Below, piece after piece: positions 15,854-50,119 of a stretch of 64,000 nucleotides of DNA. The notes beneath the pieces are model-generated. The model saw only the letters and a program-made list of their open reading frames with translations, did not search any database and had not been told where the DNA came from. Source of the DNA: Schmidtea polychroa (lineage: Eukaryota); contig CM097885.1 in NCBI GenBank assembly GCA_044892525.1, positions 115,134,001 to 115,198,000 on the forward strand, written 5' to 3'. Numbering within the stretch: position 1 is the stretch's first letter; every line of letters starts with the position of its first letter. The position numbers and the translations under genes were made by a program.

Positions 15854-15918
15854 TGATCTTTCTTGTTCGTTCTTTCGTGGGGCTTGTATCAGCCTTTTCC
15901 ATCCACCGGCGTGGATAA

Positions 15919-30450: not shown

Positions 30451-30930
30451 CTAACTGAAATAGATCGTGTGCTTCTCTTTTATTACACATGTACACATAG
30501 AACAACGGATTAGACTGGCGGCGCATTTGTCACAATGGCTAAGGTGCCCACAAGGTAGAATCAGAATTCTGGCAGGTCGTGTCTTGCAAATGTTGCACGT
30601 TCTCAAGGCCGCTGCTTTTTCTATGATCAAGACTCGTATTCTCTTAGACAGAGTTTTCACTTGTTCGCGGATTCTTACGTATTCAATATTCAAGGCGGGA
30701 TCGTCGAGACGTTGCTGCATCCATTGGTAGTGGATAGATAAATCAGTATCGTTATTTGTTGATCCTAATCTGTCCGTTAAAAAGTTTTGCTTGGACATTA
30801 GTGGTGCGTTGTGGCGTTGTTGTTCTAGGATCTCTATTTGTTGCAATTTCTCCCTTAAGGTCTTTAGTGAATCGTTTTCTATGTCGACGAACCGGCTTAG
30901 TCGCTGTAAATGTTGTCGGGCTTCTGACAT
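30451..30930 (-). CDS. Accessory protein with C-terminal IAP/MDM2-type RING finger (putative E3 ligase)
   Basis: CNICKTRPARILILPCGHLSHCDKCAASLIRCSMCTCVIKEKHTIYFS* at the extreme C-terminus, as in IAP RINGs; no BIR domain seen. Confidence 0.85.
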   Translation of the reverse strand: MSEARQHLQRLSRFVDIENDSLKTLREKLQQIEILEQQRHNAPLMSKQNFLTDRLGSTNNDTDLSIHYQWMQQRLDDPALNIEYVRIREQVKTLSKRIRVLIIEKAAALRTCNICKTRPARILILPCGHLSHCDKCAASLIRCSMCTCVIKEKHTIYFS

Positions 30931-31424
30931 ATCTAAATAAATGTGTTGTCATTACTCGGTCTCACTTACAAAAATAAAAATAATATAATTGTGTTGTAAT
31001 CAATATTCGTTTGGCTTTTATTCGCTATTGTTTCTAGTTTATGTGTTTTATTCAATCTTTAACACTTCCCCCTTTTTAATTTAATAAATTAAAATTAAAC
31101 AAAATTAGCCAATTCCCGTTTTCTTTTCTCATCATACTCAATCATTAGACTCATTTTTATTCATGCATACTCCATTTCAGACACATATTGTTCGTATTGT
31201 CATTTATTACACTATAATATCACACTGATTCGGTTCGGTCCCGATTTCGTTATTATCATAATTAATTAAATTATTAAATTAACACCTCATAATACAATAA
31301 TAGGCAGTTAAACAAATCAAATTGAGTGAATCCCGGCTGAGCCCCCAAAAATCATGTTGGCATATGAGGGAGAAGAAACCCATACATACATAACCGTCAA
31401 CATACCAGACCTCATCGTTTAGCT

Positions 31425-31608
31425 CAGGCACTTCCTATGCATACGCCAAATGATCATCCGAATATTCCCACGCATGAGCCCGTGGTGATGTTCCACGTTG
31501 GTACTGCCCACACAGGTCGGAAAAGGTTAGCAGGTGAGCCCCTACTTTAGGACTACTGATAACCCCCTCGCGGTTCAGGTTCCATGGTGCCTTAGAAGGA
31601 CTTACCCC
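31425..31608 (-). ncRNA. Conserved structured motif, copy A (inside the intact element)
   Basis: GTAAGTCCTTCTA..AGTAGTCCTAA..GGGGCTCACCTGC..AGTACCAA shared with four other copies; covarying stems. Confidence 0.55.
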
Positions 31609-31899
31609 TATTCGTACATCAATCACGGTCCGATCCTGGTCCAAGGGAACGACCTTCATCCTGATTTCATTCATCTCACAGCATTATTTCGTTTATTCTG
31701 ATTTCAAAAATCAAACATACGGAAACTTCACAAGACAAAATCGAACAGAAAATATATTGACACCGACAACACAAAAGTAATTACAGCGTTACCAATGATA
31801 GGTTTAACAACATTTAATCAATTTGAACATGCAGCGTTATCGACGTTTGCAAGTTGAATCACAACTCGAAGAGAAATCGAGATCGAACGTAGGTTGTTT

Positions 31900-32661
31900 C
31901 TAGGTAAAGTTTTCCCCGTCGGCGATTATCTCATCGATGTCGACAGGCAATCGACAATCCGATATAAACCTGATGCCATTGGCCGGGACAATACGAAAAA
32001 CTTCCTTCGAGGGAATCGAATGGGTAGATGATATTTCGGTTAATTTTGACTGCGCTGCAGACAATGATGCTTCGAGCGTCTTTATCGCATCTCTGCGTTT
32101 TTTATTCTTCTCGGCCCTGGTTGGATGCTTGCGTTTTCGGGGTGACGGATTTTCTTCTCCAACCGTGATGACAGTAGGTGCCACGAGAATCGGGGCCAGA
32201 ATTGGGTCAGATGGACCACCTTTCATTGGTAGGTATCCTGACAGCACTGAGGCTGGGATGGGCGGTAGATGTGAACCGTGCCCTTGACAAGTTGTGGTGG
32301 AGGTTGTAGATGGCTGATGGTGGAGAGGGAAAACGTTTGTTCCGTCGATGACAGGAAACTCGCGCACTCGCTTGGCTAATTCTGCCTCCGTATAGACTTT
32401 GTGGAGGGCTTCGGGCTGGGCCTTTATCGTCAATCGTTGATTACGACTCTCCTCCAGGAGGCTATCGCGACAATGCTCCAGTCGCAGGATCTTGCTACGC
32501 TCCTCCTTCATTTGTGGCGGGGAGAACCACGTGCCTTCGTAAAGGTCAATTCTCTTTTTCAGTGCCCCGATGTAGAGTTGAAGCTGCGCGATGTCAGCAT
32601 TTTTATCAGCGCAGGAAAGACAAGGACGAAGAGCGTTTCCAGATTGGATGGGCGTAGTCAT
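31900..32661 (-). CDS. ORF-X, 253 aa: CxxC, coiled coil, basic patch; unknown function
   Basis: Open ORF with homologues at 36.3, 39.75, 45.3 and 50.0 kb. Confidence 0.75.
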   Translation of the reverse strand: MTTPIQSGNALRPCLSCADKNADIAQLQLYIGALKKRIDLYEGTWFSPPQMKEERSKILRLEHCRDSLLEESRNQRLTIKAQPEALHKVYTEAELAKRVREFPVIDGTNVFPLHHQPSTTSTTTCQGHGSHLPPIPASVLSGYLPMKGGPSDPILAPILVAPTVITVGEENPSPRKRKHPTRAEKNKKRRDAIKTLEASLSAAQSKLTEISSTHSIPSKEVFRIVPANGIRFISDCRLPVDIDEIIADGENFT

Positions 32662-32960
32662 TCTAGAATTTTAATCAATAGTTTATGTTCATATCATTCC
32701 CTCCTATTCACAATCATTCAGTTACAACACATTCAGGCAAATTTTACTCAGTCTAGAGACTTTGGAAAGAAAACGGGGAAATGCTTGAAAACTAATTCAT
32801 TCGACGTAAGATCAACATTTAATTTAGGTTGGATGGTTCCCACCTATTACTCCCTTTTGATTTTTAGTAATTATGAATTCTACATTTTTACTTTTCGAGA
32901 AAATAATAATTGAACAATCCAACTCTTAGCATCGTGGATAGTTGATTTGGGTATGCCCAC

Positions 32961-35452
32961 TGTTGTAGGGCCAGAAATTCGGTAGCATTTATATTTATTT
33001 GTGTAGAATCAGTCCTGATAAATGAAAGTATTGCGAACTATATTTTATAATTAATATATTAGGAATTAAAATATAATATTTTCCAAAAACGCGCCATGCT
33101 CGTTGTCGTGGTGACGCCTACACGTGTGTGTTTGTATGTCATGTTTCGTCTCTACGACGCGGCTTATCATGCTTACTGGATCAGTCTGGACTCATGCCTT
33201 TCAAGCAAATTCATCTATCCACTCTCTCGCCCTTACACACAGTTCTACTATCCTGAGCAATTACGATTACGAAATTATGATGTCATAGTGTAGTTTACTA
33301 TCCAGATTTATTACCATCCTACTGAGATGCATTCTATTTTAAGGCGTAATAATGCGTGTATTTCCGAGACACAGTCGATTAAGATTTCTACTAGAAGTTT
33401 TATGAGCAACCATATTCTAGATGGTAGATGACCAATTCGGGGGATAATAGGTGAACTGGTGTTGGAAATCTAATTTTTATCGTACGGACGACTCAAGATA
33501 ATCACTTGTCAGTGCATCAACTGAATAAGTCAGTACGGAAATTGGTATCTTATCATTCCTACCAGATTCCCGTCGGTCGTTTAATTCTATTAGCCACAGT
33601 TTGACTGAAATTCATTTATCAATTATCTGACAACCTCGACCGCGGCTTCCTAATGCAATTAACAATTTACCGATGACACTGTCAGTGGTTGATCTCATCT
33701 CTATCGTCGATAGTCCGATAATTGCTCATGATTTATTTACCTTATTTGCAGAAAACGGCGCTTATCAGAAATCCGAGTGTCAACAATCAAGGCTATAAGT
33801 ACATCCCCTATGGGTTTCATCGCTAACGTGCTGGCAATCCAAATCAGACGATATCTTATGAATTTACTATGCTGCAGACAAACAGTTGGATTTAATCGCA
33901 AACGGTGATTGTCAAGATTCTTTCTTAGCTACTCTGATCGTCAGGCTGATTTTCCTGAAAGATTTTCCTCAATCTATGTGAAGTTTGTTTGGATCTATCT
34001 AAACACTCATATCCATCTAAATCCGGATTAACCTCTGTTGGGAGTTCAAGCTTCCTATACGAATATCAGAAATCCCGATATAACTGAACGAAATGATAGA
34101 ATTATCCTCCTAACGATCGCGCTGAGTGAAGGAAAATTTTTACTCCGCAACTGGATTTTTCCATCTACCGAGTCTCATCACCCCTCATGCACCGTCATGA
34201 GGGACCAATCAACTCCTTTACATTCAAAAAAAAAAAATTAAACATTCGTATAAAAGTCATAATAATGACAGAATAAATGATGAGCAAAATAAACAAATCG
34301 AAATACCCGGCGACCATATCATCTGGGCTCCAAGTATGATGCTTTTCCCTTTTCGATCATATATTCAATTTCAGCATTTGCAAACATCTCATTGATTATT
34401 ATCACCTTCTCCAGTCCTAATATCTTCGCAACATCTCCTAGATGCATGCCACAAAAACTCCTCGTGGCTACTTCCTCCATTTGGCATCATACTTGAAATC
34501 ACCAGAGGGTATAGTCGTCGGCACCATGAAGAAAGGCAGTTTCTATTTTCAAATAAATTTATTAAATGAAATTATTCTTATTATTTACAAAAATTTACTA
34601 AAGTCAATCATAAATATCTATTAAATTCAATCATATAAGACTAATCCATAAATAACTTAACATACTTCGAGGTTTGAAAAACTGGAGTTAATCGGTTAAC
34701 GCGAAGGTTTTCTTGAGTAAGTTTACTGAGCTTCTTCCTAAAATCGATTTGGTTGTTTTTGAAATTAGTCCTTCGTAGTAGTTCGTAAGTCAAGTTCTGC
34801 AATCGTGAAAATTAAAGTGGTTCCTGAATGTCGTCCTGTAGAGTTTGGTTAAAAGTGGTTGTTCAAATTTAAAAATTTTACCTGTAGAGTTTGGTTAAAA
34901 GTGGTACTCTACTAATTTTTCGCGTTTCTTATATACTATTTTTTCGTCCAATCAGGACTCAGTTAGGTTGTAATTTTTATATTTATTATTATTTAATGTT
35001 TTTATTATAATATATTAGCCTTTAATAACTTAACTTATTTCTTATTATTATTTTATTTATTTTTCTTATTCTTATTATTTTTCTCCTATTTTTCCTGCTG
35101 ATTTATGGTTACTTTATTGCCATATGATTTTTTGTTTTAATTAGGCTTAGAGATATTTTTATTTTTATTTATTGCTTTAATTTCTCGTTTATTTTCTCTC
35201 ACTTTTTCGTTTATTCTATTTCTACTTTACCCGCTGGGTGCTTTAAATCCTTTCTCTTTTGTCTTCGTTCCAATTCTTAGGGGTTTTATTTATTTATTAC
35301 TTATTCTTATTTCTTTTTATGGGTATTTTATTGTTTCCTTATTTACTATTGAGGTTTGATGGTAATTTATCTTTTATTATATTTTGTTTATTTTTCGAGG
35401 TTCGCTTCCCGATTCAACCCAGTTTTTCTCTACTTCAAAATTTAGCCCAACA
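32961..35452 (-). repeat. 5' LTR, about 2.49 kb
   Basis: Right end is fixed by the repeat boundary (TGTTGGGCT on minus). Left end is inferred from plus-strand TGTTGTAGGG at 32961, which gives TGTTG...CAACA termini. Confidence 0.8.
34877..34952 (-). promoter_or_regulatory. LTR promoter: CCAAT box, TATA box and downstream 5' splice donor
   Basis: ATTGG/CCAAT at 34948-34952; GTATATAAG at 34936-34928; CAG|GTAAAA donor at 34882/34881. The same layout occurs in the related LTR at 43.2 kb. Confidence 0.65.
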
Positions 35453-35862
35453 ATAGTCAACTTTTATTCTGCAACTCCATCTGCAAACAAATCTTGATAC
35501 GATGATGAAAAGACACTGACACACAAGCACAGCGAGTAAATCGAGATCCTTATCGACTCACGGTAGAGTGTGATGCAACTAGACGATGCCCACGAAATAC
35601 CCGATAACGTCATGACGTCTCCCAGTAGATAATAATTTTTTATTACTCAACAGAGCATGAGGATAATTGAGTGAAATTAACATGAGGTCCACGAATGCAC
35701 ACCAGATAGAAATCTGAAACTAATGCATGTCTACACACAGTTAAGCGTCACTATGATGACAATTACGGTGTGGAATTTAAATAGTTAAACTTTTAAATTA
35801 TAATAAAAAATATATTTAAATTAACAACTTGTGATTTTACACCAATCTATCCCGGTTTAACA
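35453..35862 (+). mobile_element. 3' part of a related LTR into which the main element inserted
   Basis: Patchy similarity to the distal main LTR (acacacag..gcgtcac..), followed by ORF-X and the motif in the same order. End coordinate is tentative. Confidence 0.45.
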
Positions 35863-36297
35863 CCACGTAAGGGGACATTGGCAGTATTGATCTATCTGTT
35901 TTAACATAAAACCTACATAATTCTACAAGGCATAAAAACAAAGTATAAAAAGTATAATTGGAAAAAATAATAAATAAAATTAGAGATGATGAAAATAATA
36001 GCGAAACTCAATAACGATGAATTAAACAGTGATTGTCAAACCCCGAAAATAGACACAAGATTGATGTAAGAGTTAAGTTATTTGCGGATTCCCATTTTCT
36101 TTTTCATTGAATTGCAAAGAATGAGTAAATTGATTTGAATGTTTGAGGTTTAAATGAATGTGAGTGTTGTCAAGGGTGCGAATATGTGGGATAGTCCTAA
36201 ATGGATGTATTTATGGAACGATAAAACTCGCGTCGTAAAAGTATAAATGACATTTCAATGATTTTAAAGGTGTAAATGTAAACTTCTTAATCTTTAG

Positions 36298-37061
36298 ATG
36301 ACTACTTCAACTAATTCTGGAAAACACTTTCACCCGTGTTTCTCCTGCACCGATAAAAATGCTGATATCGTGCAGCTTCATCTTTATATCGGGGAATTAA
36401 AGAAGCGTATTGACCTATATGAAGGAACGTGGTTCTCCCCGCCACAAATGAAGGAAGAGAAGAGCAAGATTTTACGATTGGAGCACTGCCGTGACAGTCT
36501 CCTAGAAGAAAGCAGGTGCCAGAGGCTAACCATAAAAGCCCAATCAGAGGCTCTCCACAAGGTATATTCCGAATCAGAGATAGCGAAGCGAGTTCGCGAA
36601 TACCCCATAAAAGACGGGACTAACGTGTTCCCAGTACACCATCAATCCTCGGAAACATCTTCGACAACTAGTTGTAAGGGACATGGCCTACAGTTGCCAC
36701 CCATTCTCGCCCAGTTCTCTCGGGCTATAGGCATATGACAAGCGGTCCATCGGACCCTATCTTGGCTCCGACTCTCATATCTCACATCGCTCAGCCTTCA
36801 ACTGAAACTACAATGCCACCTCGAAAGCGTAAAAGGCCTACACGCTCTGAGAAGAATCAGAAGCGCAGAAACGCCATGGCCGCGCTCGAAGCTTCGTTAT
36901 CTGTGGCACAATCGACCATCAAAGAAATCTCAACCACCCATTCAATCCCATCGAAAGAAGTATTCCGGGTAGTCCCAACCGTCAGTATAAAATTTCTTGA
37001 AGATCGCTGGCTACCCGTTGATATTGATGAAATGATTGCTGAAGGAGAAGTCATCCAGTAA
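36298..37061 (+). pseudogene. ORF-X homologue with one frameshift (~36715-36735)
   Basis: KKRIDLYEGTWFSPPQMKEE.SKILRLEHCRDSLLEESR and HSIPSKEVFR..LPVDIDE match the 31900-32661 ORF. Confidence 0.85.
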
Positions 37062-37362
37062 TTCGACTTTCCACCAGTCTCGATTTCGTTCATTTCTTAA
37101 TAACCACCATGATAATCAACGACATTTTTCTAAGAAACTGCATCGCATGTTTTTTTTCGATTTGGTTTTTCTTTCTCAATGTATTATCCAGTTGTAAAAT
37201 ATATTTTTATTGAAATCAATATAAGTTTCGCTGTGTTTAATGAGTTATTTGCAGAAATTGTTATGTGATTGGTATAAATTGAATGATAAGCTTTGAATAT
37301 ACACCAGTGAATGAAGGTCGTCCTCTTGGACCAAGGTCGAACCGAGTTATGTATGAGAGTAT

Positions 37363-37530
37363 GGGTATATCCTTCTACGGCACCTTAGAACCCGAACCGT
37401 GAGTGGTTTAATAGCAGTCCTAAGGGGCTCACCTGTTAACAAACTCCAACCCATGTGTGCATCACCAACGTGTAACCTCTCCACGGGCTCACATGAGGGA
37501 CATCAGTAAAATCATCACGGATATGCTAGG
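37363..37530 (+). ncRNA. Conserved structured motif, copy B
   Basis: TCCTTCTACGGCAC..GTCCTAAGGGGCTCACCTG..ACCAACGTG..CCACGGGCTCA. Confidence 0.55.
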
Positions 37531-38224
37531 TGAGGGGACTGAGCGAATTAGATCGATTATATGTCCTGTACTTAAATTTTCTTTCCTCCCCACACATCCA
37601 ACACTGCAAACAACTGCTCTTTGTCTCATTATCTTTCTGGGGTTTAATTTTCAAGCATTTTCTGGCGATTTTTGAATTTTTATTTTCCGTTTTTACCAGC
37701 TTTTCCTTAAAAATGTCAGTGCCAATAACTATTCTATTCATTGTTACTTTCTTAGTATTTTCCATCTTTTATTTATCCGCTTTGTTTGTTTTAACTAGGT
37801 TTTCTATCTTTTCGTTTTTTGATTTTTAATTGTTTTATTTGCATTTTTGTTTATTAATCTAATTTTTCATTATATTTTCTTTTTTTATTTTATTCGTTTA
37901 TTTATTTTTTTAGTATTTTTCACTTTCCTCTATATTGATAAATTTTCGCGTACTGTTCAAGTTATTGATTCGCTTTGACTAAACAACTATATTAAATATT
38001 TTGAAATAATTTTCAATTATAAAAATTATCTTATTTTATTCAATTTTGCCAAAAAAGGCTTATATTATCATTTAATAATAATAAAAATATTAATAATAAG
38101 AATAATTAATTAATATATTAATAGACAAAATGCAACAGATTTATTTAGCTCTAGCATAAAATTTGAAATAAATATTTTATTACAAACTTAAACTGTTGTT
38201 AATTTTAAAACAACATTTTTTATT

Positions 38225-41200
38225 TTACTCAATTTTTCCATCTGTCATAGCTTCATACAAATAAGAGAGATTCAGTTTCTGCGTGATTTCTAGCAGTTTT
38301 AATTTTGTAGATTCGTTCCGTGTACAGCATGACAAAAATGCTTGTAACTGGGGTATACAAGCACCAACATCAATAGATCGAAGCCATTTAATTTGTTGGA
38401 CATCATAATTTTCTGAATGTATCTTAAAGGTTCATAAGTAAATAGAGTGAAAGCATAAATAATTATTTTGAAAAAACGCAACAATAATGTAAATCTTTTT
38501 CACAAAATCAGTTATATTATTTTATATTTATTCACTGTGTTCAACAGAAAAGCAAGATAAAAATAATTATATAAAATGAAAACGGTAATAATACAAACTA
38601 AACTTACTGCTATACATTTTGTTCTTTCAGCAAATATTCCCAAATCATTAAAGCACTTCGAATCAGAGGAAAAATGAATTATATGAAAAACAAAATAGAT
38701 GTCGAAAAGTTATAAATTATTATAAGAGATTGAAATATATTAAAGTCATTAAATTCACATTTTAATTTAATCAAATATTTTAAGAAAAAAGTTCATTGGT
38801 TCTGTTAGACCATAACTGGAAAAGATATCATTAGTTTAAATAAAAGGTTAAAACAGCACAGAAGAGCGAAAAAATATAAAATAATTATTTTATGCGTCCC
38901 ACCCATTTCAATATATTTGGCCCAAAAAATAAAAAATTTCATGTTTCATTTCATTTTTTCTTCAATATACGCGTAGATCCCACTTGGTAGGCTTTTGTGG
39001 ATTATACATCTTAAATGCAACACGTCCTTTGAATCCAATTGTGGATTCGTGTATAGCATCAGATTGGTTTGGATGAAGTTGGATAAACATTTATCTCGCA
39101 CGGTATTGACAACAATGCCAAGTTGGTCTGGTCTGGTTACAACGACTCCAACCGGGACAGGTGGAGAAAGCGCATCTTACAGAAGACGTCCACAAAGAAT
39201 GGCATGGTATTTGTCCAATCTTTGGAAAAGAAATCGAAAAAATTAGGTTTATCGTTGATGGCTTTCATCATTTTATTCAAAAGAACTGTCCTCATCATCA
39301 TCACTACTCAAATTTGCATCTGGTAAGTCATCTTCAATTTCGTTATCATCATCACTTGCAACAGAATAATCTTCATTGTCGTCGTACATTGCAAGTTATT
39401 GCTCTAACACTTCTTTCTGCACCACGAAATCTCTTAGCCATCGTTCACAATTATTTATTCTGAAATAAGAGATTATCATATAATAATTGATAATTATAAA
39501 TACTTACTGGCAATAATAAACACGCGACGGCAAGTCTGTGTCGACCTAGACCTGAATGACATAAGAGCCAAGAAACTCTACAGCTGTGTTATCGCTAGCG
39601 ACAGTATAGTACAAGTCCTCACCTGGGCGGGGAATCTCTATTTCCCTCTATTTTCCTTGTATTTAGATCTCTGATCATATTTCATTTTTCTTCGACTCCA
39701 CGTCATTAATCAACATTTGTATAGCCATCGTCCCTTGTTTTGTAGACTATGTCAACTACTACTACATCTCCATTGGTCTTGAAGCCCTGTTTCTCGTGTT
39801 CGGACAACACCGTCAACCGAGGACATCAGGCAGAAATGCGATTGCTAAAAAAGAAGATAGCCCACCTGGAGGGGAGTCAAGTTTGCAACATCAGCTAGAA
39901 AATATGGACATTAGGTCCAAATGGATATGAAAAAGAATAATTGAGCGTCAGAAATATTAACATGATAACTGTTATAAGTGAAAATCAAAATATATTAATT
40001 TGGCAGCGTTTGAAATATTCATCGAAATGTTAGATAATCTAAACTTTTTTTAAAAATTATAAAATCAATAAAAATTTATATTATTCATTAAGCGATGATA
40101 ATAAACATCCAAGTTGAGAATTGATAGTTTTTAGTTTAATATTTAAGAAATATTATATTTTTCAAGATTTTTTATTTGTAACATAAACTCAATAAATTTT
40201 AAATTGAAATTAAAAACGTACCAGATTTGAATGTGTAATGCTGATGATGGTGTTAAAAAGTGAACTTATTTCAAGGTATATTTCTTGAATTGACGTATTT
40301 TCAGTCTGCAAACTGCAAGTATAAGCTAAGCGCACCAGATTATCTAAAACATTTGGTTCAGATTGTAAGAGATTGAGAGCTTCATCAGCCGCCATATTGG
40401 CAACTACGACATTAATTGTAGGTAATATCAGTATCAAACTGTTATAGAATTGACCAATAATTATTAGATGTGGCTCTTCATCACATATTTTGTTGAGATA
40501 TTCGTCGAAACTCGAATATACAGCATTAAAATTTAAAACTAAGCAAAATAGTAATTTAAATAAGTATCAAATTTTTACTTAATGCTACGATTCCATTTTC
40601 ATTGGTTGAAAACAAGTGAATAAGATAATGAAAGTAATCAATATCGTTATTGGTGAACCACCTATAAATATTAATCATTTAAAGAAACTACAAAATATAA
40701 TATTCCATAATATTCAAGATCAATTTTTAAACATAAACTATGGCACCATATATGAAAAAAAGGTAAGTCCTTCTATCGGCACTCAGGAACCCGTACCGCG
40801 AATCTTACAGGGAGTATTCCTAACATATGGGCTCACCTGCTTGTAAGTTCCAAACTGCGTGCGCATCACCAACATGATACGTCGTCATCGGTACACTTAT
40901 GGGAGATAAATCGTAAATCGTGAAGGAAGCTTAGGGGATTAGACTGAGTGCACAAATATTTACCCTCAGTAACCAACATCAAGATCAGCTCTAATCTGTT
41001 GGCCTATATCAACTGTTTCTCTCATAATTTGTTTCTTCGTGATATTCATATGTTCCGTGAATAAAATACAAACAAGCAGTATCTATTCTAGCATAAATGG
41101 TTTTGTATAGAACTATAATAGGTTTAGTATAAAGTGAATATTTCTTGGTAGCAACATAAATTTAATATTAAACAATTATATGATAATATAAGCCTTTTCC

Positions 41201-44200
41201 TGTGAAGTATATATTCAATAAAATGAAAGAATTTTTCAACTATAAAAATAGTCCTTTTCAATAGATCTTCATTTTCAGTGATTTCAAACCAATCACCAAT
41301 GTAATTGGCTGAAAGGAGTATAAATAAAAATATTTAATGACAATAATAAATTACTATTCATGAATTTTCCAGCAGCATTCTTATTCAAATTTGTCTGAAA
41401 TAGTTGGACACTAAGCGTTTCTAAAAAAATGATAAAAATATAAAATAATTTATAAAAAATTTACTCTTTCCAACGACAGATTTTTTAATATTATTTGATG
41501 AAAATGAGTGAAATTGTAAAATTGAAAATTAATTGTGACGATAATTGTGAATGAATATGCTTATAAAGAGAAATTGATTTTGGTAATCGACCAATCATAA
41601 TTGAGCAATACAAATTATGCATACATAATTTTGAAAATACACACAAAGATGAGAGAAATTTATGCACATGTCCTTATTAATGAAGTCGCGAGTTAAACAA
41701 TTATATGTACGATTTAATAATGACCTATCTTTGTTAATCTTACATGGTTAACAATGTAAGTGCACCGAGCATTAAGTTTAAGTTTCTCATTGTTTGTAGT
41801 TTCGAACCCAATAAAACTGTATAATAGAAACTCAAAGGATGAAACATATGTATCTTGTTCGGTTTCTTTGCTAATAAATATTTTCCGATTCCATTGACCT
41901 GAATAGAACTACATCAATAAATTAAATATTTGAAAAACCTACTCCATGACAACGTTATCATTTGCAGTAATTTGTACCTCATTTTCAAATACTCAATATA
42001 TTATAACATACACAGGTTCAGCAATATAAAATTCCACATAATTTCTACTATCTGTAATAGATATCATTAGAAATACTTCTTCAAATGCCCCATATTCAAT
42101 AACTGTTTGATGCAATGATCGATCAAATTAGGATCACAATTCAAATTTACTGCAAATCATTTATCAAATATAGTTGTCTTTTCGTTCGTTTGTTTAGATG
42201 CGATGACCGATGTTTTCTACTTTTTGGAGCAGGGTCAGAATGCTAGTTAATCATCATTTTGAAATACTCGCGATCCCTGGTAAAGCCTTCTTTAGTTCGA
42301 ATAAAGCATTTGTTTACAGAGAGGATAATATCTTTTTATCATCTGTAATCACATATTTAGTAGTTTTCATACTGAATATAACTAAGTCTAGGAATCGGGA
42401 TTGCAAATCTATCAATTATCCGCAACCAGCCGGATCCGCACTGTTTACCAATAAAACATGGTAATTCCCCGCCGGCTTACCTACAACTATACTTTACAAA
42501 AATGTTGAATCTTTTGTAAAATCAATTAATTTATCATCGAGTATTTTTATTTCTATCGTTTATACATGAAGTTAAAACAGGTAAATACATGAAATTATCT
42601 AGTGATACCATTTTCCTACTCATTCATTTCAATAAAGACACATTGGAATCACCAACAAAGGCGGGTTCAATAATATGTAAATTAACATTTCCTGATAAAG
42701 TTTAATTATTTTCGGTTTTTCTATACACTCATAAAAATCCTAATGATTATTAAAAATATGTGAACAATTTTGAATTAGATAAACTGATCAATGTCTGCTA
42801 TATATAATTCATTCTTAAAAATAAATGTGTATGGCTGATAAAAAGGAAAGGTTACTGTTGGGCTGGAAAGTAAAATAATAATTTAAAAGCATAAGAGGAA
42901 AGCAATAGGAAATAAAATAAAAATTGGAAACAAACCAAAAATAAATAAAAATCAGGACAAATAAACAATAAGAATAAACAATAACAAATTAACCAAAGAG
43001 AATTAAAACAAAAAATAAAAAGATGAAAAATTAAGATAAGAAAACCCGGAAAAACAGTAAAATAATGGAAATTAAATAATAAATAACAAAAATAAATAAA
43101 AAATAAAGAAAACAATAAGGAAACACTAAGAAAACCACGAAAAACAAAGAAACCAAATTAAATTAAAAAATTACACCGCGCTCAATTTTGATTGGCTCGC
43201 ACAAAAACAAAATTAGGTATATAAGGGGAACACTGAATCAGAATATTCAGTGTTAACCCAACAATTCTTAAGGTAAAATTTGTGCATATATTCACGTTCA
43301 GTGTTAACCCAACAATTCTTAAGGTACACAGCGCATTCTAGGATCAATCAATTATTAATTTCCGACGACAAATCACTCGTGGACTTCAATATTTTAGCGA
43401 AGCAGTAGTATTGAAATAAAAAGTAAATTTTTACCATTTGTAAAGTTTTTGAATTTCTATGGTTGGACTAATATAAATTTATACTTAGTAAAGGGTTTCG
43501 TTTCTTTTGTTCATCAGTAATTAATAGTATTAGTAAAATTTTCCTTTAATTTATGTTTCGAATATACTTGTAATTATCTATTTAGAATAAAAATTTTTGA
43601 TACAAGTCGAATTATATTTAATAATTCAGTATTTTGTATATATTTTATAAAAAGTCGAAAAAATAATATTTTGAATTCCATTATAATGATGATAGTGTAT
43701 GATGCGAAGCTGAGGTTCGGCTGGCCACCGCTCGAGGAACACTGGTTGTTCCTCCTGCAAGAAGGTCGGGTGTGACTTCAGAGGCACAGTGGTTGAAATG
43801 GGTCATCGTGGGGGCTTCCTCACTGATCCGTCACCACAGGAAGGAGAAGTGCGGATTTAGAATCACAAAACAGAAAATAAAATGTCAAAATGAGTAGTGT
43901 ATAATATAATTGTGCGGCATGGAAAATCACCAATCTTCGCAATGAGTAAGGTGGCCGGAATATCTTTCATTTAGCCGATTCGAAAAGCGAGTATCCAGTA
44001 GTCATCGTACTTTGGGCCATCTGAAAGCCAAATCTGACGTTAGTTTCTTTCTGGTAGAATTTTCGATCCATATATCGTAATCGGCAAGACTATCATACGG
44101 TGGTAAGAATCATAAATCGAGTAAAATTCCTACACTCGCGGTGAATGGTCATCGATATCTAAATCGCCGTAGAACGTTTGAAAATTCCGAATTAAAACCT

Positions 44201-47200
44201 CGTCGGACTACCAAACTTGTCTTGAAAAACATTCTGAGTGAAACGAGGCAAAGCCCCGAATTTCGATATAGGTAATTCCATAGTTGCAGATAATCGGACA
44301 TCCATCGATCGGTGATGTACTTGTAGGAAAATATACAATATTAAATTCCAGCTGTTTAGATGTTGTGAAAATGACGGCCGATAATTTTGTCACTTAGATA
44401 ATTTGATAAGGCACTACTGAATCGTGGTATGAACCGAATACACCTTGATAAGAATATGCAATAGAATGTTCTTCAGTTGTTGAAATCACACATGATCGCA
44501 CCAAGATAATCAATTAAACATAATCACTCGCCTGCGAATGTCAGACACTACGATCACAATCAACGGGCAGATAATCCGCCAGCATTTCCACTCAAACTGA
44601 CTGCTGCTATCGATTTATTTATCACATGAAACATTACATGTGGGGATTCTACTAAGAGAGTGGCCGAATAATCATAATATGATAAAGATCGACAGCTAAC
44701 CACGGGATACCGATAAGAATTTCAAACGACGGCCGTACATCAGAGAGTGAATTTTTGTCATAGAATTAACTCACTAAATGCACTTCGGTAAAAGCTAACT
44801 AGAGATTTTGATAATAAAGAATATTAATTGTAATGCAACAGATACTGCCTTAATCAGTTATTTAATAACTAAATATTTTAATGATTAAAAATTTCTTGTA
44901 ACATAATGGATACTGTTTTAATTAATGACTAATAACTAAGGATTGAACTAATCATTTGCTGTTATCGAATCCCCCGGGGAATATCTCGTTCCGTAATAAT
45001 AAGACGAGGGCTCATGAACGTCGTAGGGTTGAACTAAAAATTCTGAGTGGCCGATCTAGCCCAGCGGATAATGATTTGATTTTTTTTTATTTTTGCAATT
45101 ATCTCTCTAAATTTATCCAAGTCCCGATGTTTTCTGGTATGTGTTCCGGATGATATGTGTGTGTTGATTTTCTTTTAAATTAATATGATTTTTCTTTCTA
45201 ATAAAATGATGGTCGAATGAGCATGATGGCAGTCATGAGCTTACTAGATATAAACTATTCTTAATAGAATTTTATTCAGCTTTCGAAATGTCCAAGTTGC
45301 CAATCACCCCAGCCATACGTCCATGTCTCTCTTGCGCGGACAAAAATCAATTAATACAGACTCTTCAAACTCAAAATGGCCTCCTAAAAAAGAAATCGGA
45401 CCATTTAGAAGGGACGTACTTTTCTCCAAGTCAAATGAAGGAGGTGAGAACGAGACTTACTCGAGTAGAGAAGTGTAGGGACGATGTGTTAGAAGAGAAT
45501 CGCGCTTTACGCACCCTTATTAAGGAGCAATCCGAGGCGTTAGATAGGGTGTTCGTACAAGCTTCAGTCACACGCAAAATCGTCAATATCCCACTCGCGG
45601 AAGAAGATAATTTGTTCCCGTCCCACCACCTTTCAGGGATCTCGTTGGTGAAGCCATCAAATCAGGTCAACTTAAGCCACTCGAACACTCCTCGGCCGAC
45701 GGCCGAAGTCGTCTGTACCGGCACAAGTCGCGCTGACCCCAGGATAGTGGACTTAACAACTTTGATCACCCTTCCGGAGGTGAAAAAGACCAAGAAACGC
45801 CGGCAACCATCTAGGGCCGAGCGTACCAAAAGGAAAAGGCCGAAAGAGAAACGGCTCTGATCGCCTCTGTTCAACCGCCAGCTCCAGTACTTCCAGTAGA
45901 ACCCTCCTCGCATTCTCTTCCTATCTACCGGGTAGTCCCGCCCGTCGATTCCTCATGGGAAGAAAACGCTAAAGACTTTTTCGATCTCGATGAGATCTTT
46001 GCCGGAGCTTCTCCGAATACCTTGTGATCTACATCCCTGTTCATCCTCGAAGATTATGTAATCCTGTAAATGTAATTTCTTGTAATAGTTCGTTAATATA
46101 TTTTTCTGTTGTGACCTGTCAAATTAAATAATTTTGAATGTTTGGGTTAAGATGGATGGCTGAGACGGAATTTAGACAATAAGTGAAGGGAGTCAATGTG
46201 TGGCAGAGATGTGATACAGCTGAATTTAGGGAGAATAGAAGTGAGGATGATGTGGTAAAAGTTGCTGATGAATGTGAAATAAAGACAAACTAGTGGTTGA
46301 GTGTTGTGGTGGAGGTTGATTGCAAAGAGGGATGATACATGAAATCTTAGAATGATGTGAATGACGTAAGTCCTTCTATCGGCAGTCGAATGTTTGTTAA
46401 GTCGAGTTGTGGTGGGGGAGTAGTCCTAAGGCAGGGGCTAACCTGCTCATTCGCAGCTCGCCGACGTGGCACAGTACCAACATGATGTAAATCATGGGTG
46501 TCATGTTCGGAGTATGATCGTGTGGGTGTTGGTTAAGGGTCCCGTGGGATGAAGATGCTGTGTGTGCGGTTAGGACTATCAACCCCTAGTGTAACAAAGT
46601 ATTTTTGACCCGACCCAAGACCCAGCATTACTTTTAATTTGATAGTCTTTCAGATCGCATTTTTTCATATATCTAGGTTATGGTATCTGTAATGTATCTG
46701 TAATTTTCGAACGATGCATAAGATGATAAATAATAATATACAACATATAGAAAATGGTAATCAGGATATAATATGACGTAGTTATTATAAGGAATACTGA
46801 TATCACATTCATCGTTTTCATTATCAAATTAATTGTTAAAATAAAAATTATTTGAATAGAATATTTTCATCAAGTGGAACAATTTTTGGTAATTAAAATT
46901 AATTTTAAGACTAAATAATTTATAAAAATGTAATATCAAAATACTTTATTTTGATTGGTTCATTCTTTTTACAATATTGTCATTGAAGACGACTGACATT
47001 TACTTCAAGTAATTGTTTTCTCATTACTTAAGTCTATATTTTGATTTCAGTGGTTTAAAAACTAGTAAATTAATGTTACAGGCAAACAATAATACTTGAT
47101 TGACTTATTCAAATATTTAGTATATATTGATAAACACTTTATGCCATAAATCTCCAATATAACATCCAAATAAAAACTTGAAACGATTGATTATCCTTTA

Positions 47201-48784
47201 AGGAAACTTAAAATTGTACTTTTTGATTCTATGTAAAACATTCCAATATATCATTAGCCAGAAAATATATAGAAGTCAAAATATAAGCGCATTAAAACAT
47301 AGTTAAAAATAGTTTTATTTACAAAACTAAATTCAATATTTTTAAATTTCTTTTAATTGTACCGATAAAATATTACTAACTTTGCTTCGTTCCGTGCCAT
47401 TAAAGCTGCAGCAAGCAATTCATTTGTTATCCAATTTTCACAAATGTCTTCATCTAGTTTCATTAACTGACCAACCACTTGCATTGTTGATATTAATAAC
47501 TCACCTAATTATAATATTAATGTTATTCAAAATTTTGAATTAATATACTAAACTATTAATAGAAGAATTAAGAATAAATAAAATGTGATTGAAGAAATTC
47601 TCATTTGATTTAATTACGTACATCCACTTGGAGGAACAACTAGAATTCTTCAAAACAATTTTGATCAACCTGAATATTGTAAAGTATTATGAATTTAATA
47701 TGTAAAAATACCTAGCGCACTCCAATAAAAAAGATGGGCAATCAGATGACCAAAATGATATTAACAGTTTACTAGAATTTCATGTAAATAAGAAAATAAA
47801 ATGTGACAATCGACTAACACAATTGATAAATTTCTTGTTATTTGATTACATAATTCATCATTAGAGGCAAAATTAGTCAAGATTCCAATAAAAAGTTCCT
47901 AAAAAATTTTAAAATACTGAAATATGTGAAAATTTACCAATAAAAAGTTTTAGTGCTTACAATTTATATCTCAAAAATTTTTAAAAATAAAAACAAGCAC
48001 GGAATACAAAATATCTATAATAAAAAATACACAGTTGGACAATAAATTATGGAATTTAACAATAAGGGCCTATTTTGAAATAAAAAATATGAATTAAGGG
48101 TGTGTTCCCGTCAAAACAAATACCTACTATTATATAATGATTACATTTCTTATGTAAGAATTGATATTTTATCAATGGAACGTGGTCAATTGTTACCTAG
48201 TAACATACGTAATTAATTCACTCTTAATTAACTAAATTATATTTTATTACTAAAATGAACTAACTATTAATTCTTACAAAACTCACTAGAACACATCAAT
48301 TGCTAGTTACAGCTATGCATAAACACTTCCCAACACGATTTGTTAATGCAAATAAGTACAAGCTTGCAAATAACGAACCCATGCGATGTGATGGTTAGTA
48401 AGGGTTAATTAATTTTTTTTTAAATAATTAAATACCATTATTGTAATAATAAAATATCTAATTTTGTCTTACATTAAATCTATCAGATTTATTGATACTT
48501 ATGGCATGACATATAGGTTCAATAAAGGCAAAATTTTTGATAAAGCATAGTACGTCTTCTTCAACAGTCATGTCCATAAATTTACATAAATCATCATCAA
48601 AATCAAAATCTTCGTTAGCTACTTCAGGATTATGTTCAACTGAACAATAATTGATTAACTGACTCATGATTCTTTTAATAATATCAATGCAAGTTAATTT
48701 ACTATAGCAAGTTTCACCAATTAAATCACATCTTAAATCTTCTTCTTTTATTCCTGGAGGAGGCGATATATTTCTCAAAGCCAT
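38225..48784 (-). CDS. SAAL1: Host SAAL1-like gene (multi-exon)
   Basis: Exon 48473-48784 (RNISPPPG..DLIGETCYSK..CKFMDMTVEEDV) resembles the SAAL1 N-terminus as I recall it (RNPSPPP..DCIGSTVYSK..CRVWDMSMDEDV). Phase-consistent GT-AG exons at 47819-47898, 47712-47771, 47554-47669, ~47385-47504; later exons 40222-40538 and 38225-38422. Some middle exons were not resolved. Confidence 0.8.
39749..39900 (+). pseudogene. Degraded ORF-X 5' fragment in a SAAL1 intron
   Basis: tgtag|actATG, then LKPCFSCSDN and LLKKKIAHLEG. Confidence 0.6.
40762..40940 (+). ncRNA. Conserved structured motif, copy C
   Basis: GGTAAGTCCTTCTATCGGCAC..TTCCTAA..GGGCTCACCTGC..ACCAACATG. Confidence 0.5.
42856..44903 (+). mobile_element. 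LTR of a related giant-element family
   Basis: Starts TGTTGGGCT like the main LTR; A-rich U3; GATTGG; GTATATAAG at 43217; 30-bp direct repeat containing AAG|GTAAAA donor at 43272/43273; followed by ORF-X and the motif. 3' end is tentative. Confidence 0.6.
45288..46027 (+). pseudogene. More divergent ORF-X homologue (frameshift near 45850)
   Basis: RPCLSCADKN, LEGTYFSPSQMKE, CRD..LEE.R, basic patch KKRRQPSRAERTKRKR. Confidence 0.8.
46363..46578 (+). ncRNA. Conserved structured motif, copy D
   Basis: GCAGG/CCTGC hairpin; CATGAT-GTAA-ATCATG hairpin; TAGTCCTAA pairs with TTAGGACTA. Confidence 0.6.
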
Positions 48785-49555
48785 ACTAAATAAGAAAAAA
48801 AATTTTTTTTAATTTAATATTGTAGGTATTTGAAAAACACATGTAATCAATTCGCTTTAATTAAAATAAACAAATTAAGTATCGAGATAAAATTAACATA
48901 GATAAATTCAAAATATATACCAGTTATTAACAATAATTATTGTTAATTTGATTATTGATAGAAGGTAATTAATTTTAAATAAAATTTCAAATTTTAAATA
49001 TATAATATAAATTGATTATGCCAGACAAATTAATATCGTATATATAAACAAAGCATAAAATTGCATAAAAACTATTTTTTTTGAACTGCAAAATAAATAA
49101 AATTATACAAATCACTTTTTAGGTATTGTTAAATATTAATATTGTTAACAAATTTTTATGATAATAAAATAATTAACAGAAGTTCAATGATATTTTTCTA
49201 TTTTGATCTTTTGTAATCTTATATATGGCATAGTAATTAATTTTGTAATTAACTGGCATTGATGAATGTTGCACGCAGATATTGCGATGGCTAATTAACT
49301 TATTTCCAGACATTAGATCAAGTGAACATTTTGAGAATGAACTCATTGTCGATTATAAAGCGCTTTATTAATTTTTGTGGCTACACCTACAAAGGTAAAC
49401 ACACTGATGTTGAGGTCTTACTATTTGAGATTCTCAACTTTACTGGTTCTTATGTAAATAAAAGAAATATGAGTCTTTGTATAAATATTGTTGGGTAATC
49501 GACTATGTCAACAAGAGCTTACTAGTTACAAGGGGATGATGGTCGAGAAAAGAGA

Positions 49556-49760
49556 AGTAGCCCTACACCATTTTATGCTGACCGCAAATCAAAAACCCAC
49601 ACGATTACTTTCTCATCATGACACCCATGATTTACATCATGTTGGTGCTGTGCCATGATGGCGAGATAAGATGAAGCAGGTGAGTCCCTGCCTTAGGACT
49701 ACTCCTTCACCCTATCTCGACTCCTCCGTTTTCTGACGGCCGATAGAAGGTCCTACGTCA
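49556..49760 (-). ncRNA. Conserved structured motif, copy E
   Basis: The reverse complement has the same blocks; AGTAGTCCTA pairs with TAGGGCTACT. Confidence 0.6.
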
Positions 49761-50019
49761 CCCGCGTCGAAATTCAGTGAAATCCATTTTCTGACATTAC
49801 GTTATTCGCCTAGAAATCGTCATGATCAACATGTCCCATATCAAAATAAATAGCTTCAGCAACAACACAGAGACTATAATTAATTATTACAAGATCTAAA
49901 ACATTGAAGTAATCTCGTCAATGTTGACTCAATAGATCTCAGACAACACGCAGAGTCAAAAACGCATTACACAGATTGAACATACGGGATCATAACATAG
50001 GCGCAATCAATCACAAAGT

Positions 50020-50119
50020 AGACGGAGACGTGCCAGCAAATAGTTCGTCCAAGTCGAAAAAATCAGCAGCATCTTCTTCCCATGAGGTACTAGGAGGAGG
50101 CACCATTTGAAGCTGGCGA
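50020..50119 (-). pseudogene. ORF-X 3' fragment truncated by the palindromic element
   Basis: Reverse complement cctcatgggaagaagatgctgctgattttttcgacttggacgaactatttgc aligns with 45950-46010. Confidence 0.65.

What the first reader, a model, noticed from the sequence alone, without database searches (positions are those of the whole stretch)
31425..49760. A ~200-nt motif with covarying stems, present five times, always downstream of ORF-X
Seen in copies at 31425-31608(-), 37363-37530, 40762-40940, 46363-46578 and 49556-49760(-). Stem 1: TCCTTC pairs with GAAGGA/GGGGGA/GAGGGG. Stem 2: GCAGG-loop-CCTGC hairpin. Stem 3: outer helix varying as GTGTGGGC/GCTCATGC, CATGTGTGC/GCTCACATG and CATCATGGCAC/GTGTCATGATG, enclosing an unpaired A(G/T)YACCAA. 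Stem 4: hairpin CGTGG/CCACG versus CATGAT-GTAA-ATCATG. Stem 5: long-range AGTAGTCCTA with TAGGGCTACT or TTAGGACTA. The compensatory changes point to selection on structure. I cannot assign it to a known family. Inference: packaging signal, export (RRE-like) element, IRES or ribozyme.
Basis: partly seen in the sequence, partly recalled or inferred. Interest (0 to 1): 0.82.

Follow-up and report, generated by a model that had tools for sequence, protein, structure and literature searches.

The report
Conserved structured RNA after ORF-X
A 190-230-nt RNA element that folds the same way in five anciently diverged copies follows a small orphan gene, once apparently inside a giant planarian-type retrovirus-like element; it matches no known RNA family, and its role, probably deciding the fate of transcripts that keep it, is inferred and not shown.

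Summary
The five copies are real. An invariant-base pattern hits exactly these five sites, against 0 expected. A covariance model scores them at E 1e-25 to 1e-32 and finds no sixth copy.

The element is RNA on the ORF-X strand and is not coding. ORF-X copies are saturated at synonymous sites (pS about 0.84, pN 0.11-0.23). The motif still keeps 76-77% identity within pairs, while the ORF-to-motif spacer no longer aligns. So both the ORF and the motif are constrained.

The core has two hairpins:
Its stem differs in every copy and its apex is invariant.
Of 40 cells, 37 pair, and 6 of 8 positions are doubly substituted.

Stem 5 holds in c4, c5 and c2. Stem 1 is no better than shuffles. Stem 2 is one of two alternative folds of the apex.

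The element starts at a splice-donor-like GUAAGU. There is no Rfam hit.

Copy c1 lies between an LTR-like repeat and gag of a roughly 35-kb Burro-like retroelement. The other four stand free, with damaged or vestigial ORF-X.

Best reading, at moderate-to-low confidence: a protein-binding control element for unspliced or read-through ORF-X transcripts. The ribozyme and IRES readings have no support.

The parts
31420..31608 (-). Motif copy c1. GUAAGU head at 31605; core 31451-31608; the 3' tail pairing is weak.
   Evidence: CM R1 142.7 bits. The core folds into the two-hairpin architecture, z -1.5.
37362..37555 (+). Motif copy c2. Head is GUAUAU at 37365. A 4-nt deletion lies in the apex loop. 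The tail pairs with block 2.
   Evidence: CM 124.5 bits. Same architecture in the MFE fold. S5: 14/1000 shuffles do as well.
40760..40948 (+). Motif copy c3, degenerate. H_a is kept; stem 3 is weakened.
   Evidence: CM 133.5 bits. H_a duplex: 4/1000 shuffles; stem 3 not significant. The core MFE adopts a different fold.
46363..46591 (+). Motif copy c4. GUAAGU head at 46366, with a strong tail helix S5.
   Evidence: CM 152.8 bits. Core z -4.4. S5 extended: 17 bp, 0/1000 shuffles.
49540..49759 (-). Motif copy c5, the most stable copy. Head is GUAGGA at 49756.
   Evidence: CM 157 bits. Core z -7.2. S5 extended: 18 bp, 1/1000 shuffles.
49662..49719 (-). Hairpin H_a in c5, as the example: a 15-bp stem plus the conserved apex (AGUAGUCCUAA .. 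GGGACUCACCUGCU).
   Evidence: The homologous hairpin forms in all five copies with different stem sequences.
49614..49660 (-). Stem 3 / stem 4 hairpin in c5. The conserved 8-nt internal loop A(G/U)(U/C)ACCAA faces a single G.
31900..32661 (-). ORF-X copy X1, intact, 253 aa. Predicted helical hairpin (residues 15-100), a disordered linker, and a basic helix (182-211).
36298..37061 (+). ORF-X copy X2: one frameshift and no other break seen.
   Evidence: Both pieces show pN 0.11-0.23 against pS 0.84 versus X1.
39776..39877 (+). ORF-X remnant upstream of c3. Only the N-terminal 34 aa are recognisable; the rest is no longer an ORF.
   Evidence: tblastn E 3.7e-4 with X4.
45288..46003 (+). ORF-X copy X4: one change of frame. 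About 40% identical to X1.
50010..50087 (-). Remnant of the ORF-X 3' region upstream of c5 (74% identical to c4). The rest is replaced by other repeats.
33845..35453 (-). LTR-like repeat, the presumed 5' LTR of the giant element. It is almost identical to 1-1647.
1..1647 (-). LTR-like repeat, the presumed 3' LTR. It is cut by the window start.
1..35453 (-). Burro-like giant gypsy-type retroelement, which contains c1. Its genes run on the minus strand in this order: ORF-X, motif, RING, gag, LINE-like RT, env-like glycoprotein, PR-RT, IN-ankyrin, RING-MATH/TRAF. The coding region is split into at least 10 ORFs.
   Evidence: Pfam hits. Published description of Burro elements in PMC6431247.

Best explanation
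WHAT IT IS. The motif is a cis-acting structured RNA in the untranslated tail of the ORF-X transcript, 250-350 nt after the stop codon. It has four parts:
- a conserved single-stranded head that begins with a splice-donor-type sequence (G|GUAAGU, then CCUUCUAUCGGC);
- hairpin H_a, which presents an invariant 29-nt apex;
- a 3' tail that can pair with the apex.

HOW IT PROBABLY WORKS (inferred). The helices act as scaffolds. The invariant loops and the head are binding sites for a protein and possibly for U1 snRNP. Because everything after the donor-like site is lost if that site is used, the element would mark RNAs that stay unspliced or read through. It would control their retention, 3'-end formation or export. 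That is the logic of retroviral response or transport elements and of autoregulatory 5'-splice-site structures. The most economical partner is the ORF-X protein itself, a coiled-coil protein with a basic helix.

SHOWN: the copies, their conservation, the helices and their covariation, the strand, the absence of coding, and the genomic context.

INFERRED: that the motif lies on the ORF-X transcript, that the donor-like site is used or bound, who binds it, and what follows.
For: - The five copies are specific: 0 expected by chance and no sixth copy.
- ORF-X is under purifying selection while its synonymous sites are saturated. The motif still aligns at 76-77% within pairs, and the spacer does not align.
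- The spacing from ORF to motif is kept at 250-350 nt.
- H_a and stems 3 and 4 are kept through double-sided changes. Their G-U pairs exist only on the ORF-X strand.
- The loops and the head are invariant while the stems vary. That is the pattern expected of recognition sites held on scaffolds.
- The conservation edge falls exactly at GUA in all five copies. Three read GUAAGU. GGTAAGT occurs only 8 times in the 128 kb of both strands.
- The apex has two mutually exclusive pairings, both conserved.
- ORF-X is predicted as a helical hairpin plus a basic helix, with no enzyme fold.
- c1 lies between the LTR-like repeat and gag of a Burro-like element, on the same strand.
- The GC profile shows ORF-X and the motif as two GC-rich islands in AT-rich DNA. 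The unit ends at the motif.
Against: - There are no transcript data. Whether the motif is on the ORF-X mRNA, and whether the GUAAGU is ever used or bound, is unknown.
- c2 (GUAUAU) and c5 (GUAGGA) have weaker donor sequences than the following CCUUCUA block is conserved. Donor function may therefore not be the main constraint.
- No conserved acceptor or downstream exon was found.
- Four of the five copies stand outside any recognisable retroelement, so a retroelement-specific role cannot be general.
- c5 keeps a perfect motif with almost no ORF-X. The motif can therefore persist without its proposed partner in cis.
- There are only five sequences, and clade A folds are only weakly more stable than shuffles (z -0.8 to -1.5).
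Confidence: 0.33

Rival explanations
1. An ordinary 3'-UTR regulatory element (stability, localisation or translation) of a tandemly duplicated host gene family. One member was captured, with its UTR, as an accessory gene of the giant retroelement. The GUAAGU would be just part of a binding site.
For: - The copies are old paralogues: synonymous sites are saturated.
- They are clustered within 18 kb in both orientations, with a birth-and-death pattern of one intact ORF, two with a single frame change and two vestigial.
- They have no LTRs, terminal inverted repeats or tails of their own.
- Burro elements are described as carrying host-like accessory ORFs.
Against: - The exact coincidence of the conservation edge with a donor consensus.
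- ORF-X relatives in other proteomes occur at 10 or more loci, 8 of the 10 fused to unrelated host domains. That fits a dispersed, mobile-like sequence.
- The only intact ORF-X is the one inside the young element.
Confidence: 0.25
2. A packaging or dimerisation signal of the giant retroelement's genomic RNA. It would sit in the leader just after the major splice donor, so that only unspliced RNA carries it.
For: - c1 lies between the 5' LTR-like repeat and gag, on the same strand, and starts at a donor-like site.
- The architecture has several hairpins with invariant loops.
Against: - Four copies have no gag, pol or LTR nearby.
- An ORF of 253 aa and about 290 nt of spacer lie between the LTR and the motif.
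- No second Burro-like copy was available to test whether the module is an integral part of the element.
Confidence: 0.1
3. A separate stable non-coding RNA: either its own small gene or an intron-derived stable RNA whose 5' end is the donor site.
For: - Sharp 5' edge, GC-rich island, and persistence in c5 without ORF-X.
- A TATA-like hexamer lies about 100 nt upstream in c1 and c2.
Against: - No conserved promoter or terminator elements across the five copies.
- No Rfam class resemblance; the snoRNA hits have E above 2 and lack conserved boxes.
- The linkage and spacing to ORF-X are conserved.
Confidence: 0.1
4. The 3'-end recognition structure of a non-autonomous retroposon (an ORF1-only element) copied by the reverse transcriptase of a LINE.
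For: - The unit is an ORF plus a structured 3' region.
- ORF-X relatives are dispersed in another genome.
- A LINE-like RT is present in the window.
Against: - The covariance model finds no copy at or near the LINE-like RT's 3' side.
- There is no poly(A) or microsatellite tail and there are no target-site duplications. Conservation fades into AT-rich DNA.
- The copies are far too diverged to be recent insertions.
Confidence: 0.07
5. A self-cleaving ribozyme whose cleavage site is the sharp 5' edge.
For: The sharp 5' boundary, and a possible pseudoknot (apex with tail, crossing H_a).
Against: - No match to any ribozyme model in Rfam, even at E up to 10 on short slices.
- The helix order does not fit the nested double pseudoknot of HDV-like ribozymes or the three-way junction of hammerheads (by inspection).
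- Clade A copies are only marginally stable.
Confidence: 0.04
6. An internal ribosome entry site for a downstream ORF.
For: It lies after one ORF. In c1 a RING ORF follows.
Against: - The RING ORF starts about 500 nt further on and is preceded by AAUAAA signals and an acceptor-like UUUAG.
- No homologous ORF follows the other four copies.
- No Rfam IRES model matches.
Confidence: 0.03
7. Not an RNA element at all: a coding exon, or a DNA-level site such as an enhancer or a transposase binding site.
For: The invariant blocks contain strings that resemble transcription-factor sites (by eye only).
Against: - c5 has stops in all three sense frames, c4 and c2 have stops in every frame, and no frame is open across all copies.
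- Indels are of 1, 2 and 4 nt, and mismatches show no 3-nt periodicity.
- Helices are kept by double-sided changes with strand-specific G-U pairs.
Confidence: 0.02

Closest known systems
Retroviral response and transport elements paired with small basic regulators (Rev/RRE, Rex/RxRE, Rem/RmRE types; constitutive transport elements). Cited from general knowledge.
   Same: - A multi-hairpin RNA of about 200 nt with invariant loops on variable stems.
- It lies in sequence that is lost on splicing.
- It is encoded next to a small helical protein with a basic helix.
- One copy sits in a retrovirus-like element that carries an env-like gene.
   Different: - No sequence or model similarity.
- The ORF precedes the element on the same unspliced RNA, instead of being made from a fully spliced one.
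- Four copies stand free of any retroelement.
- Neither binding nor export has been shown.
Retroviral leader: the major splice donor embedded in the packaging or dimerisation region. Cited from general knowledge.
   Same: - Position of c1 between the 5' LTR-like repeat and gag.
- The element begins at a donor consensus.
- Several hairpins with conserved loops.
   Different: - A 253-aa ORF and a spacer precede it.
- A RING ORF and about 3 kb separate it from gag.
- The other copies have no gag at all.
U1-snRNP-binding 5'-splice-site-like elements in 3' UTRs that restrain polyadenylation (papillomavirus late regulatory elements), and autoregulatory structures at 5' splice sites (yeast RPL30 type). 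Cited from general knowledge.
   Same: - A donor-like sequence in an untranslated tail, upstream of AAUAAA signals (c1).
- RNA structure lies next to the donor.
- Possible feedback by the encoded protein.
   Different: - Those elements are short and lack a 150-nt covarying two-hairpin core.
- The donor consensus is not strictly kept in c2 and c5.
Burro / GYPSM1 giant gypsy-like LTR retroelements of planarians (PMC6431247). This is context for the motif and not its family.
   Same: - LTR-like repeats spanning about 35 kb.
- gag with Retrotrans_gag plus CCHC.
- A mononegavirus-type fusion glycoprotein between gag and pol.
- PR-RT-IN, ankyrin, MATH/TRAF and RING motifs.
- Accessory ORFs upstream of gag.
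   Different: - The coding region is in at least 10 ORFs, not one giant ORF.
- A LINE-like RT follows gag.
- BIR, BCL2-like and Smc motifs were not seen.
- Neither ORF-X nor the motif is mentioned in the passages of that description retrieved.

Membership tests
Any Rfam 15 family | Score at or above the family's gathering threshold | tested here: not met
   0 hits in the whole window. Nothing relevant at E up to 5-10 in the region or on 350-nt slices.
Self-cleaving ribozymes (hammerhead, HDV-like, twister, pistol, hatchet, hairpin, hovlinc) | Match to the family covariance model or its conserved catalytic core | tested here: not met
   No hit even at permissive E-values.
Self-cleaving ribozymes | Site-specific self-cleavage | not testable with these tools
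   Needs RNA-end data.
Retroviral response/transport element (RRE/CTE type) | Lies in the part of a retroelement RNA that is removed by splicing | tested here: inconclusive
   All copies start at a donor-like GUA. Only c1 is inside a retroelement. Splicing is not documented.
Retroviral response/transport element (RRE/CTE type) | Specific binding by a cognate regulator or export receptor | not testable with these tools
   ORF-X has a basic helix, but no binding data exist.
Retroviral packaging signal | Located in the leader between the 5' LTR and gag of the element it serves | tested here: inconclusive
   Met for c1. Not met for c2-c5, which have no gag, pol or LTR nearby.
Dicistrovirus-type intergenic IRES | Sits immediately upstream of the ORF it drives, with triple-pseudoknot model similarity | tested here: not met
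   No Rfam IRES hit. No conserved downstream ORF.
LINE/SINE 3'-end recognition structure | Same 3' structure on a partner autonomous LINE, with the copy ending in a tail and flanked by target duplications | tested here: not met
   The CM finds no copy near the LINE-like RT. No tails or flanking repeats.
C/D box snoRNA | Conserved C (RUGAUGA) and D (CUGA) boxes with a terminal stem | tested here: not met
   Only single-copy hits at E 2.3 and 4.2, far below gathering scores. The boxes are not conserved among copies.
Protein-coding exon | A shared open frame, indels in threes, third-position bias | tested here: not met
Burro-like giant LTR retroelement (context of c1) | LTRs more than 30 kb apart; gag (Retrotrans_gag + CCHC); env-like fusion glycoprotein between gag and pol; PR-RT-IN; ankyrin, MATH/TRAF and RING accessory domains | tested here: met
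   Searches compared with the description read. The inner LTR edge, PBS, PPT and target duplication could not be checked because the left LTR is cut by the window start.

The most novel reading that the evidence does not exclude
ORF-X and the motif form a cognate regulator/response-element pair of an invertebrate giant endogenous retrovirus-like element. A small coiled-coil protein with a basic helix would bind a switchable two-hairpin RNA placed just after the major splice donor, so as to export or select unspliced 35-kb genomic RNA. The same module would also live as free-standing units in the host genome. That would be a Rev/RRE-like system that arose independently outside vertebrate retroviruses.
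Probability: 0.15. Interest if true: 0.85.

Novelty: new variant of a known kind. Interest (0 to 1): 0.6.

Why it matters
- Structured cis-acting RNAs that decide the fate of unspliced transcripts are well known in vertebrate retroviruses. They are almost undescribed in invertebrate retroelements.
- Nothing is known about how the 30-kb-plus planarian elements express many ORFs from one RNA.
- A conserved RNA with clear covariation, tied to an orphan protein family that has relatives in at least one other genome, gives a concrete handle on that question.
- It would also add a new RNA family to the databases.
- If it proves to be an ordinary 3'-UTR element of a host gene family, it is still a clean example of a deeply conserved UTR structure in an AT-rich genome.

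Tried and rejected
- **Rfam** at gathering and permissive thresholds: nothing.
- **tRNA scan:** none.
- **More copies elsewhere.** The motif pattern in metagenome, viral and prokaryote-genome collections gave only 5 chance hits without the other blocks. A protein-pattern scan of viral contigs found none.
- **Word-index protein searches** with X1 and with a profile found nothing new.
- **Exact look-ups** of window proteins and of P0001 found no contigs on record.
- **A third protein search**, with the RING-MATH ORF, meant to place the organism: best hit 29% identity, uninformative.
- **ORF-X against Pfam, PDB sequences and fold libraries:** no significant match.
- **Literature search by sequence strings:** nothing relevant.
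- **CM-based realignment (A8)** left stems 3 and 4 out of register for c1-c3, so its formal counts understate them. I replaced it with an anchor-based count.
- **Terminal inverted or direct repeats around the units:** none consistent.
- **A short conserved 'first exon'** upstream of c1 and c2: rejected. Substitutions are spread over all three codon positions, and c3-c5 do not share it.
- **Paralogues of the other retroelement ORFs near c2-c5:** none.
rejected as a conserved helix.

Full report
**1. The observation**

- A pattern built only from invariant bases hits exactly these five places; 100 shuffles gave none.
- A covariance model built from the five (R1) scores them at 124-157 bits. Run with filters off over all 64 kb on both strands, it finds nothing else better than E about 1.
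- There are therefore five copies in the window, none of them near the other retroelement genes.
- Pairwise identity is 76-77% within the pairs c1/c2 and c4/c5, about 65% between c3 and c1/c2, and 49-58% between the clades.

**2. It is RNA, on the ORF-X strand, and not coding**

- c5 has stops in all three sense frames. c4 and c2 have stops in every frame, and no frame is open across the copies.
- Indels are of 1, 2, 3 and 4 nt. Mismatches show no 3-nt periodicity.
- The helices contain many G-U pairs, which would be C-A mismatches on the other strand.

**3. The structure**

*Core architecture.* Folding the core of each copy alone gives the same two-hairpin architecture as the minimum-energy fold in c1, c2, c4 and c5. 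The z-scores are -1.5, -0.8, -4.4 and -7.2. The degenerate c3 folds differently, with z -0.3.

- In c5 it has a 15-bp continuous stem.
- The sequence of the stem differs in every copy, yet it forms in each independent fold.
- Duplex energies beat shuffles in c5 (0/1000), c3 (4/1000), c4 (40/1000) and c1 (94/1000), but not in c2.
- By inspection, four positions differ on both sides between the related c4 and c5 while pairing is kept.
- H_a carries an invariant apex (AGUAGUCCUAA .. GGGGCUCACCUGCU).

- It was read in register from the invariant CANNACCAAC loop.
- Stem 3 pairs in 37 of 40 cells, and 6 of 8 positions are changed on both sides.
- Stem 4 pairs in 23 of 25 cells, with 2 of 5 positions changed on both sides.
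- Sliding the partner by 1-3 nt drops pairing to 6-25 of 40 for stem 3 and 4-15 of 25 for stem 4.
- The formal count on the model-fitted alignment is weaker for these two stems, because that alignment keeps c1-c3 one position out of register. Even so, the covariation score for the whole structure exceeds 499 of 500 shuffles and every slid control.

*Stem 5 (apex block AGUAGUCCUA with the 3' tail).*
- It is strong in c4 (17 bp extended, 0/1000 shuffles) and c5 (18 bp, 1/1000).
- It is present in c2 (14/1000), where a U-to-C change in the apex block is matched by a G in the tail.
- It is not above chance in c1 and c3.
- It crosses H_a, so it would be a pseudoknot or an alternative fold.

*Two folds of the apex.* One is an AGUCCU/GGGGCU hairpin, with 6, 6, 4, 6 and 6 of 6 pairs in c1 to c5. 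A need to satisfy two folds would explain why the apex never varies. This is inference.

*The head.* GUAAGUCCUUCUAUCGGCAC has no conserved partner and is best read as single-stranded.

**4. The 5' edge**

- Conservation starts exactly at G|GUA in every copy.
- The hexamers are GUAAGU in c1, c3 and c4, GUAUAU in c2 and GUAGGA in c5.
- GGTAAGT occurs only 8 times on both strands of the window. An ancestral donor consensus sitting exactly at the edge is therefore unlikely to be chance.
- The CCUUCUA..GGC that follows is better conserved than positions +4 to +6 of the donor.

**5. ORF-X**

*State of the copies.*
- X1 is intact at 253 aa.
- X2 has one frameshift.
- X4 has one change of frame.
- Upstream of c3 only the first 34 aa are recognisable.
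- Upstream of c5 only a 78-nt remnant remains, next to other repeats.

*Selection.*
- Between X1 and X2, pN is 0.11-0.23 and pS 0.84. Between X1 and X4, pN is 0.41 and pS 0.79.
- Synonymous sites are saturated and the protein is under purifying selection.
- The copies are therefore ancient. The alignable motif, next to an unalignable 250-350-nt spacer, must itself be constrained.
- ORF-X and the motif are two GC-rich islands (46-54% GC) in DNA of 15-30% GC.

*Homology and fold.*
- ORF-X has no Pfam, PDB-sequence or fold match.
- The model shows a confident helical hairpin (residues 15-100), a disordered linker and a basic helix at 182-211.
- An exhaustive profile-free search found ten distant relatives (E 2e-8 to 2e-4). 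All are UniParc-only, and eight are chimeric models that join the ORF-X-like domain to unrelated host domains.
- The family therefore exists, dispersed, in at least one other genome. No DNA could be fetched for those relatives.

**6. Context**

- The left 35 kb of the window carries nearly all long ORFs on the minus strand. It lies between two direct repeats of at least 1.6 kb that differ by two mismatches, one 1-nt indel and one 39-nt indel.
- The domains in minus-strand order are: RING, Retrotrans_gag, CCHC, a LINE-like RT with zf-RVT, a Monjiviricetes-type fusion glycoprotein, protease-RT, integrase-ankyrin, ankyrin, and RING-MATH/TRAF.
- This matches the published description of the planarian giant gypsy-like 'Burro' elements: env between gag and pol; ankyrin, MATH_TRAF and RING motifs; accessory ORFs upstream (PMC6431247).
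- The source is therefore probably a planarian-like flatworm. This is inference.
- Copy c1 lies between the presumed 5' LTR and RING/gag, on the same strand.
- After the c1 motif come two AAUAAA hexamers. About 90 nt further on, an acceptor-like UUUAG lies directly before the RING start codon.
- Copies c2-c5 lie outside the element. No relative of any other element ORF is near them, and they have no terminal repeats or tails of their own.
- I could not decide whether c1 is an integral module of the element, a captured host gene, or lies between a solo LTR and a truncated element. The left repeat is cut by the window start.

**7. Interpretation**

- The pattern of variable, compensated stems with invariant loops and an invariant head is that of a recognition platform.
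- Its place, directly after a donor-type site in the untranslated tail of a small gene for a basic helical protein, and once in the leader of a retrovirus-like element, fits best a control element for RNAs that keep it. That means a decision between unspliced or read-through RNA and processed RNA, or export or selection of the former.
- I put this at about one in three.
- An ordinary 3'-UTR element of a host gene family is nearly as likely (0.25).
- Less likely are packaging proper (0.10), a separate stable RNA (0.10), a retroposon 3' end (0.07), a ribozyme (0.04) and an IRES (0.03).

**8. Limits**

- Only five sequences in about three lineages were available.
- There are no transcript data.
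- No copies were found outside the window despite searches of every available collection.

**9. Slip, declared as required**

In my private reasoning I several times recalled from memory short sequence fragments of known molecules: a ribozyme, an intron domain, a spliced leader, a small nuclear RNA, a retroviral export-signal peptide and a retroviral primer-binding site. None was entered into a tool, script, note or this report, and none served as evidence. Queries of the frameshifted ORF-X copies were made piece by piece.

Noticed in passing
window 1-35453 (minus strand): A giant (at least 35 kb) Burro-like gypsy-type LTR retroelement. Its LTR-like repeats (1-1647 and 33845-35453) differ by only 2 mismatches, a 1-nt indel and a 39-nt indel. 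The coding region is split into at least 10 ORFs, not one polyprotein. The kinds of breaks were not analysed.
   Followed up: partly
window 13472-15853 (-): An ORF of 793 aa matches the Monjiviricetes viral fusion glycoprotein family (E 7.5e-73). It lies upstream of protease-RT and overlaps it, the unusual env-between-gag-and-pol order reported for planarian Burro elements.
   Followed up: partly
window 23229-26965 (-), 22009-23095: A LINE-like RT ORF (RVT_1) and a zf-RVT ORF sit directly after gag inside the giant element. They are followed by an assembly gap (N 22809-23025) and tandem repeats of about 87 nt (22009-22665). Whether this is a nested LINE or part of the element is open.
   Followed up: no
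window 8110-11194 (-): Integrase (H2C2 + rve) continues into ankyrin repeats in the same ORF. A second ankyrin ORF follows.
   Followed up: no
proteins P0001-P0010 (another genome): The ORF-X-like domain occurs in ten UniParc-only gene models. Eight carry an unrelated host domain (GDC-P, SNF transporter, CRAL_TRIO, L21, ABC, subtilase, tyrosine phosphatase, actin). In P0001 the join falls just before what looks like the host protein's own start. P0001 and P0003 also share a PPPY-containing C-terminal block.
   Followed up: partly
window 31609-31710 (-) and 37260-37361 (+): c1 and c2 share about 50 further conserved nt upstream of the motif, with a GGUC..GACC hairpin. An (A/T)ATAAA hexamer lies about 45 nt further up. 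This is absent from c3-c5. Substitutions do not look coding.
   Followed up: partly
40-80 nt 3' of each tail (about 31355, 37596, 40971, 46620, 49497): A short CCAACA block recurs after all five copies (CCCAGCA in c4) and echoes the ACCAAC of the internal loop. The head and the apex likewise share UA(A)GUCCU. These may be paired binding sites or chance.
   Followed up: no
window 37985-38026, 41210-41249, 47325-47361 (+): A 37-40-nt AT-rich block is shared downstream of c2, c3 and c4, at 270-750 nt from the motif. It could be a 3'-end signal or low-complexity chance.
   Followed up: partly
ORF-X copies: The proportion of synonymous differences (0.79-0.89) exceeds the 0.75 expected for random sequence. 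This may mean the copies have different codon preferences.
   Followed up: no
window 53936-61068: Long inverted repeats (54464-55097 against 60092-59455 at 98%; 55114-56119 against 57483-56493 at 83%) surround ORF 57789-58307. ORF 63090-63548 has a weak DUF4371 (transposase-associated) match. Probably a DNA transposon.
   Followed up: partly
window 52242-52832 (+): An ORF with a proteasome-subunit domain (E 2e-22). It is either a host gene exon or a retrocopy.
   Followed up: no
window 31425-31436 (-): In c1 a 12-nt string (AUAGGAAGUGCC) is identical to the SNORD49 model consensus. The overall hit has E 4.2 and the other copies do not share it, so it is judged chance.
   Followed up: yes
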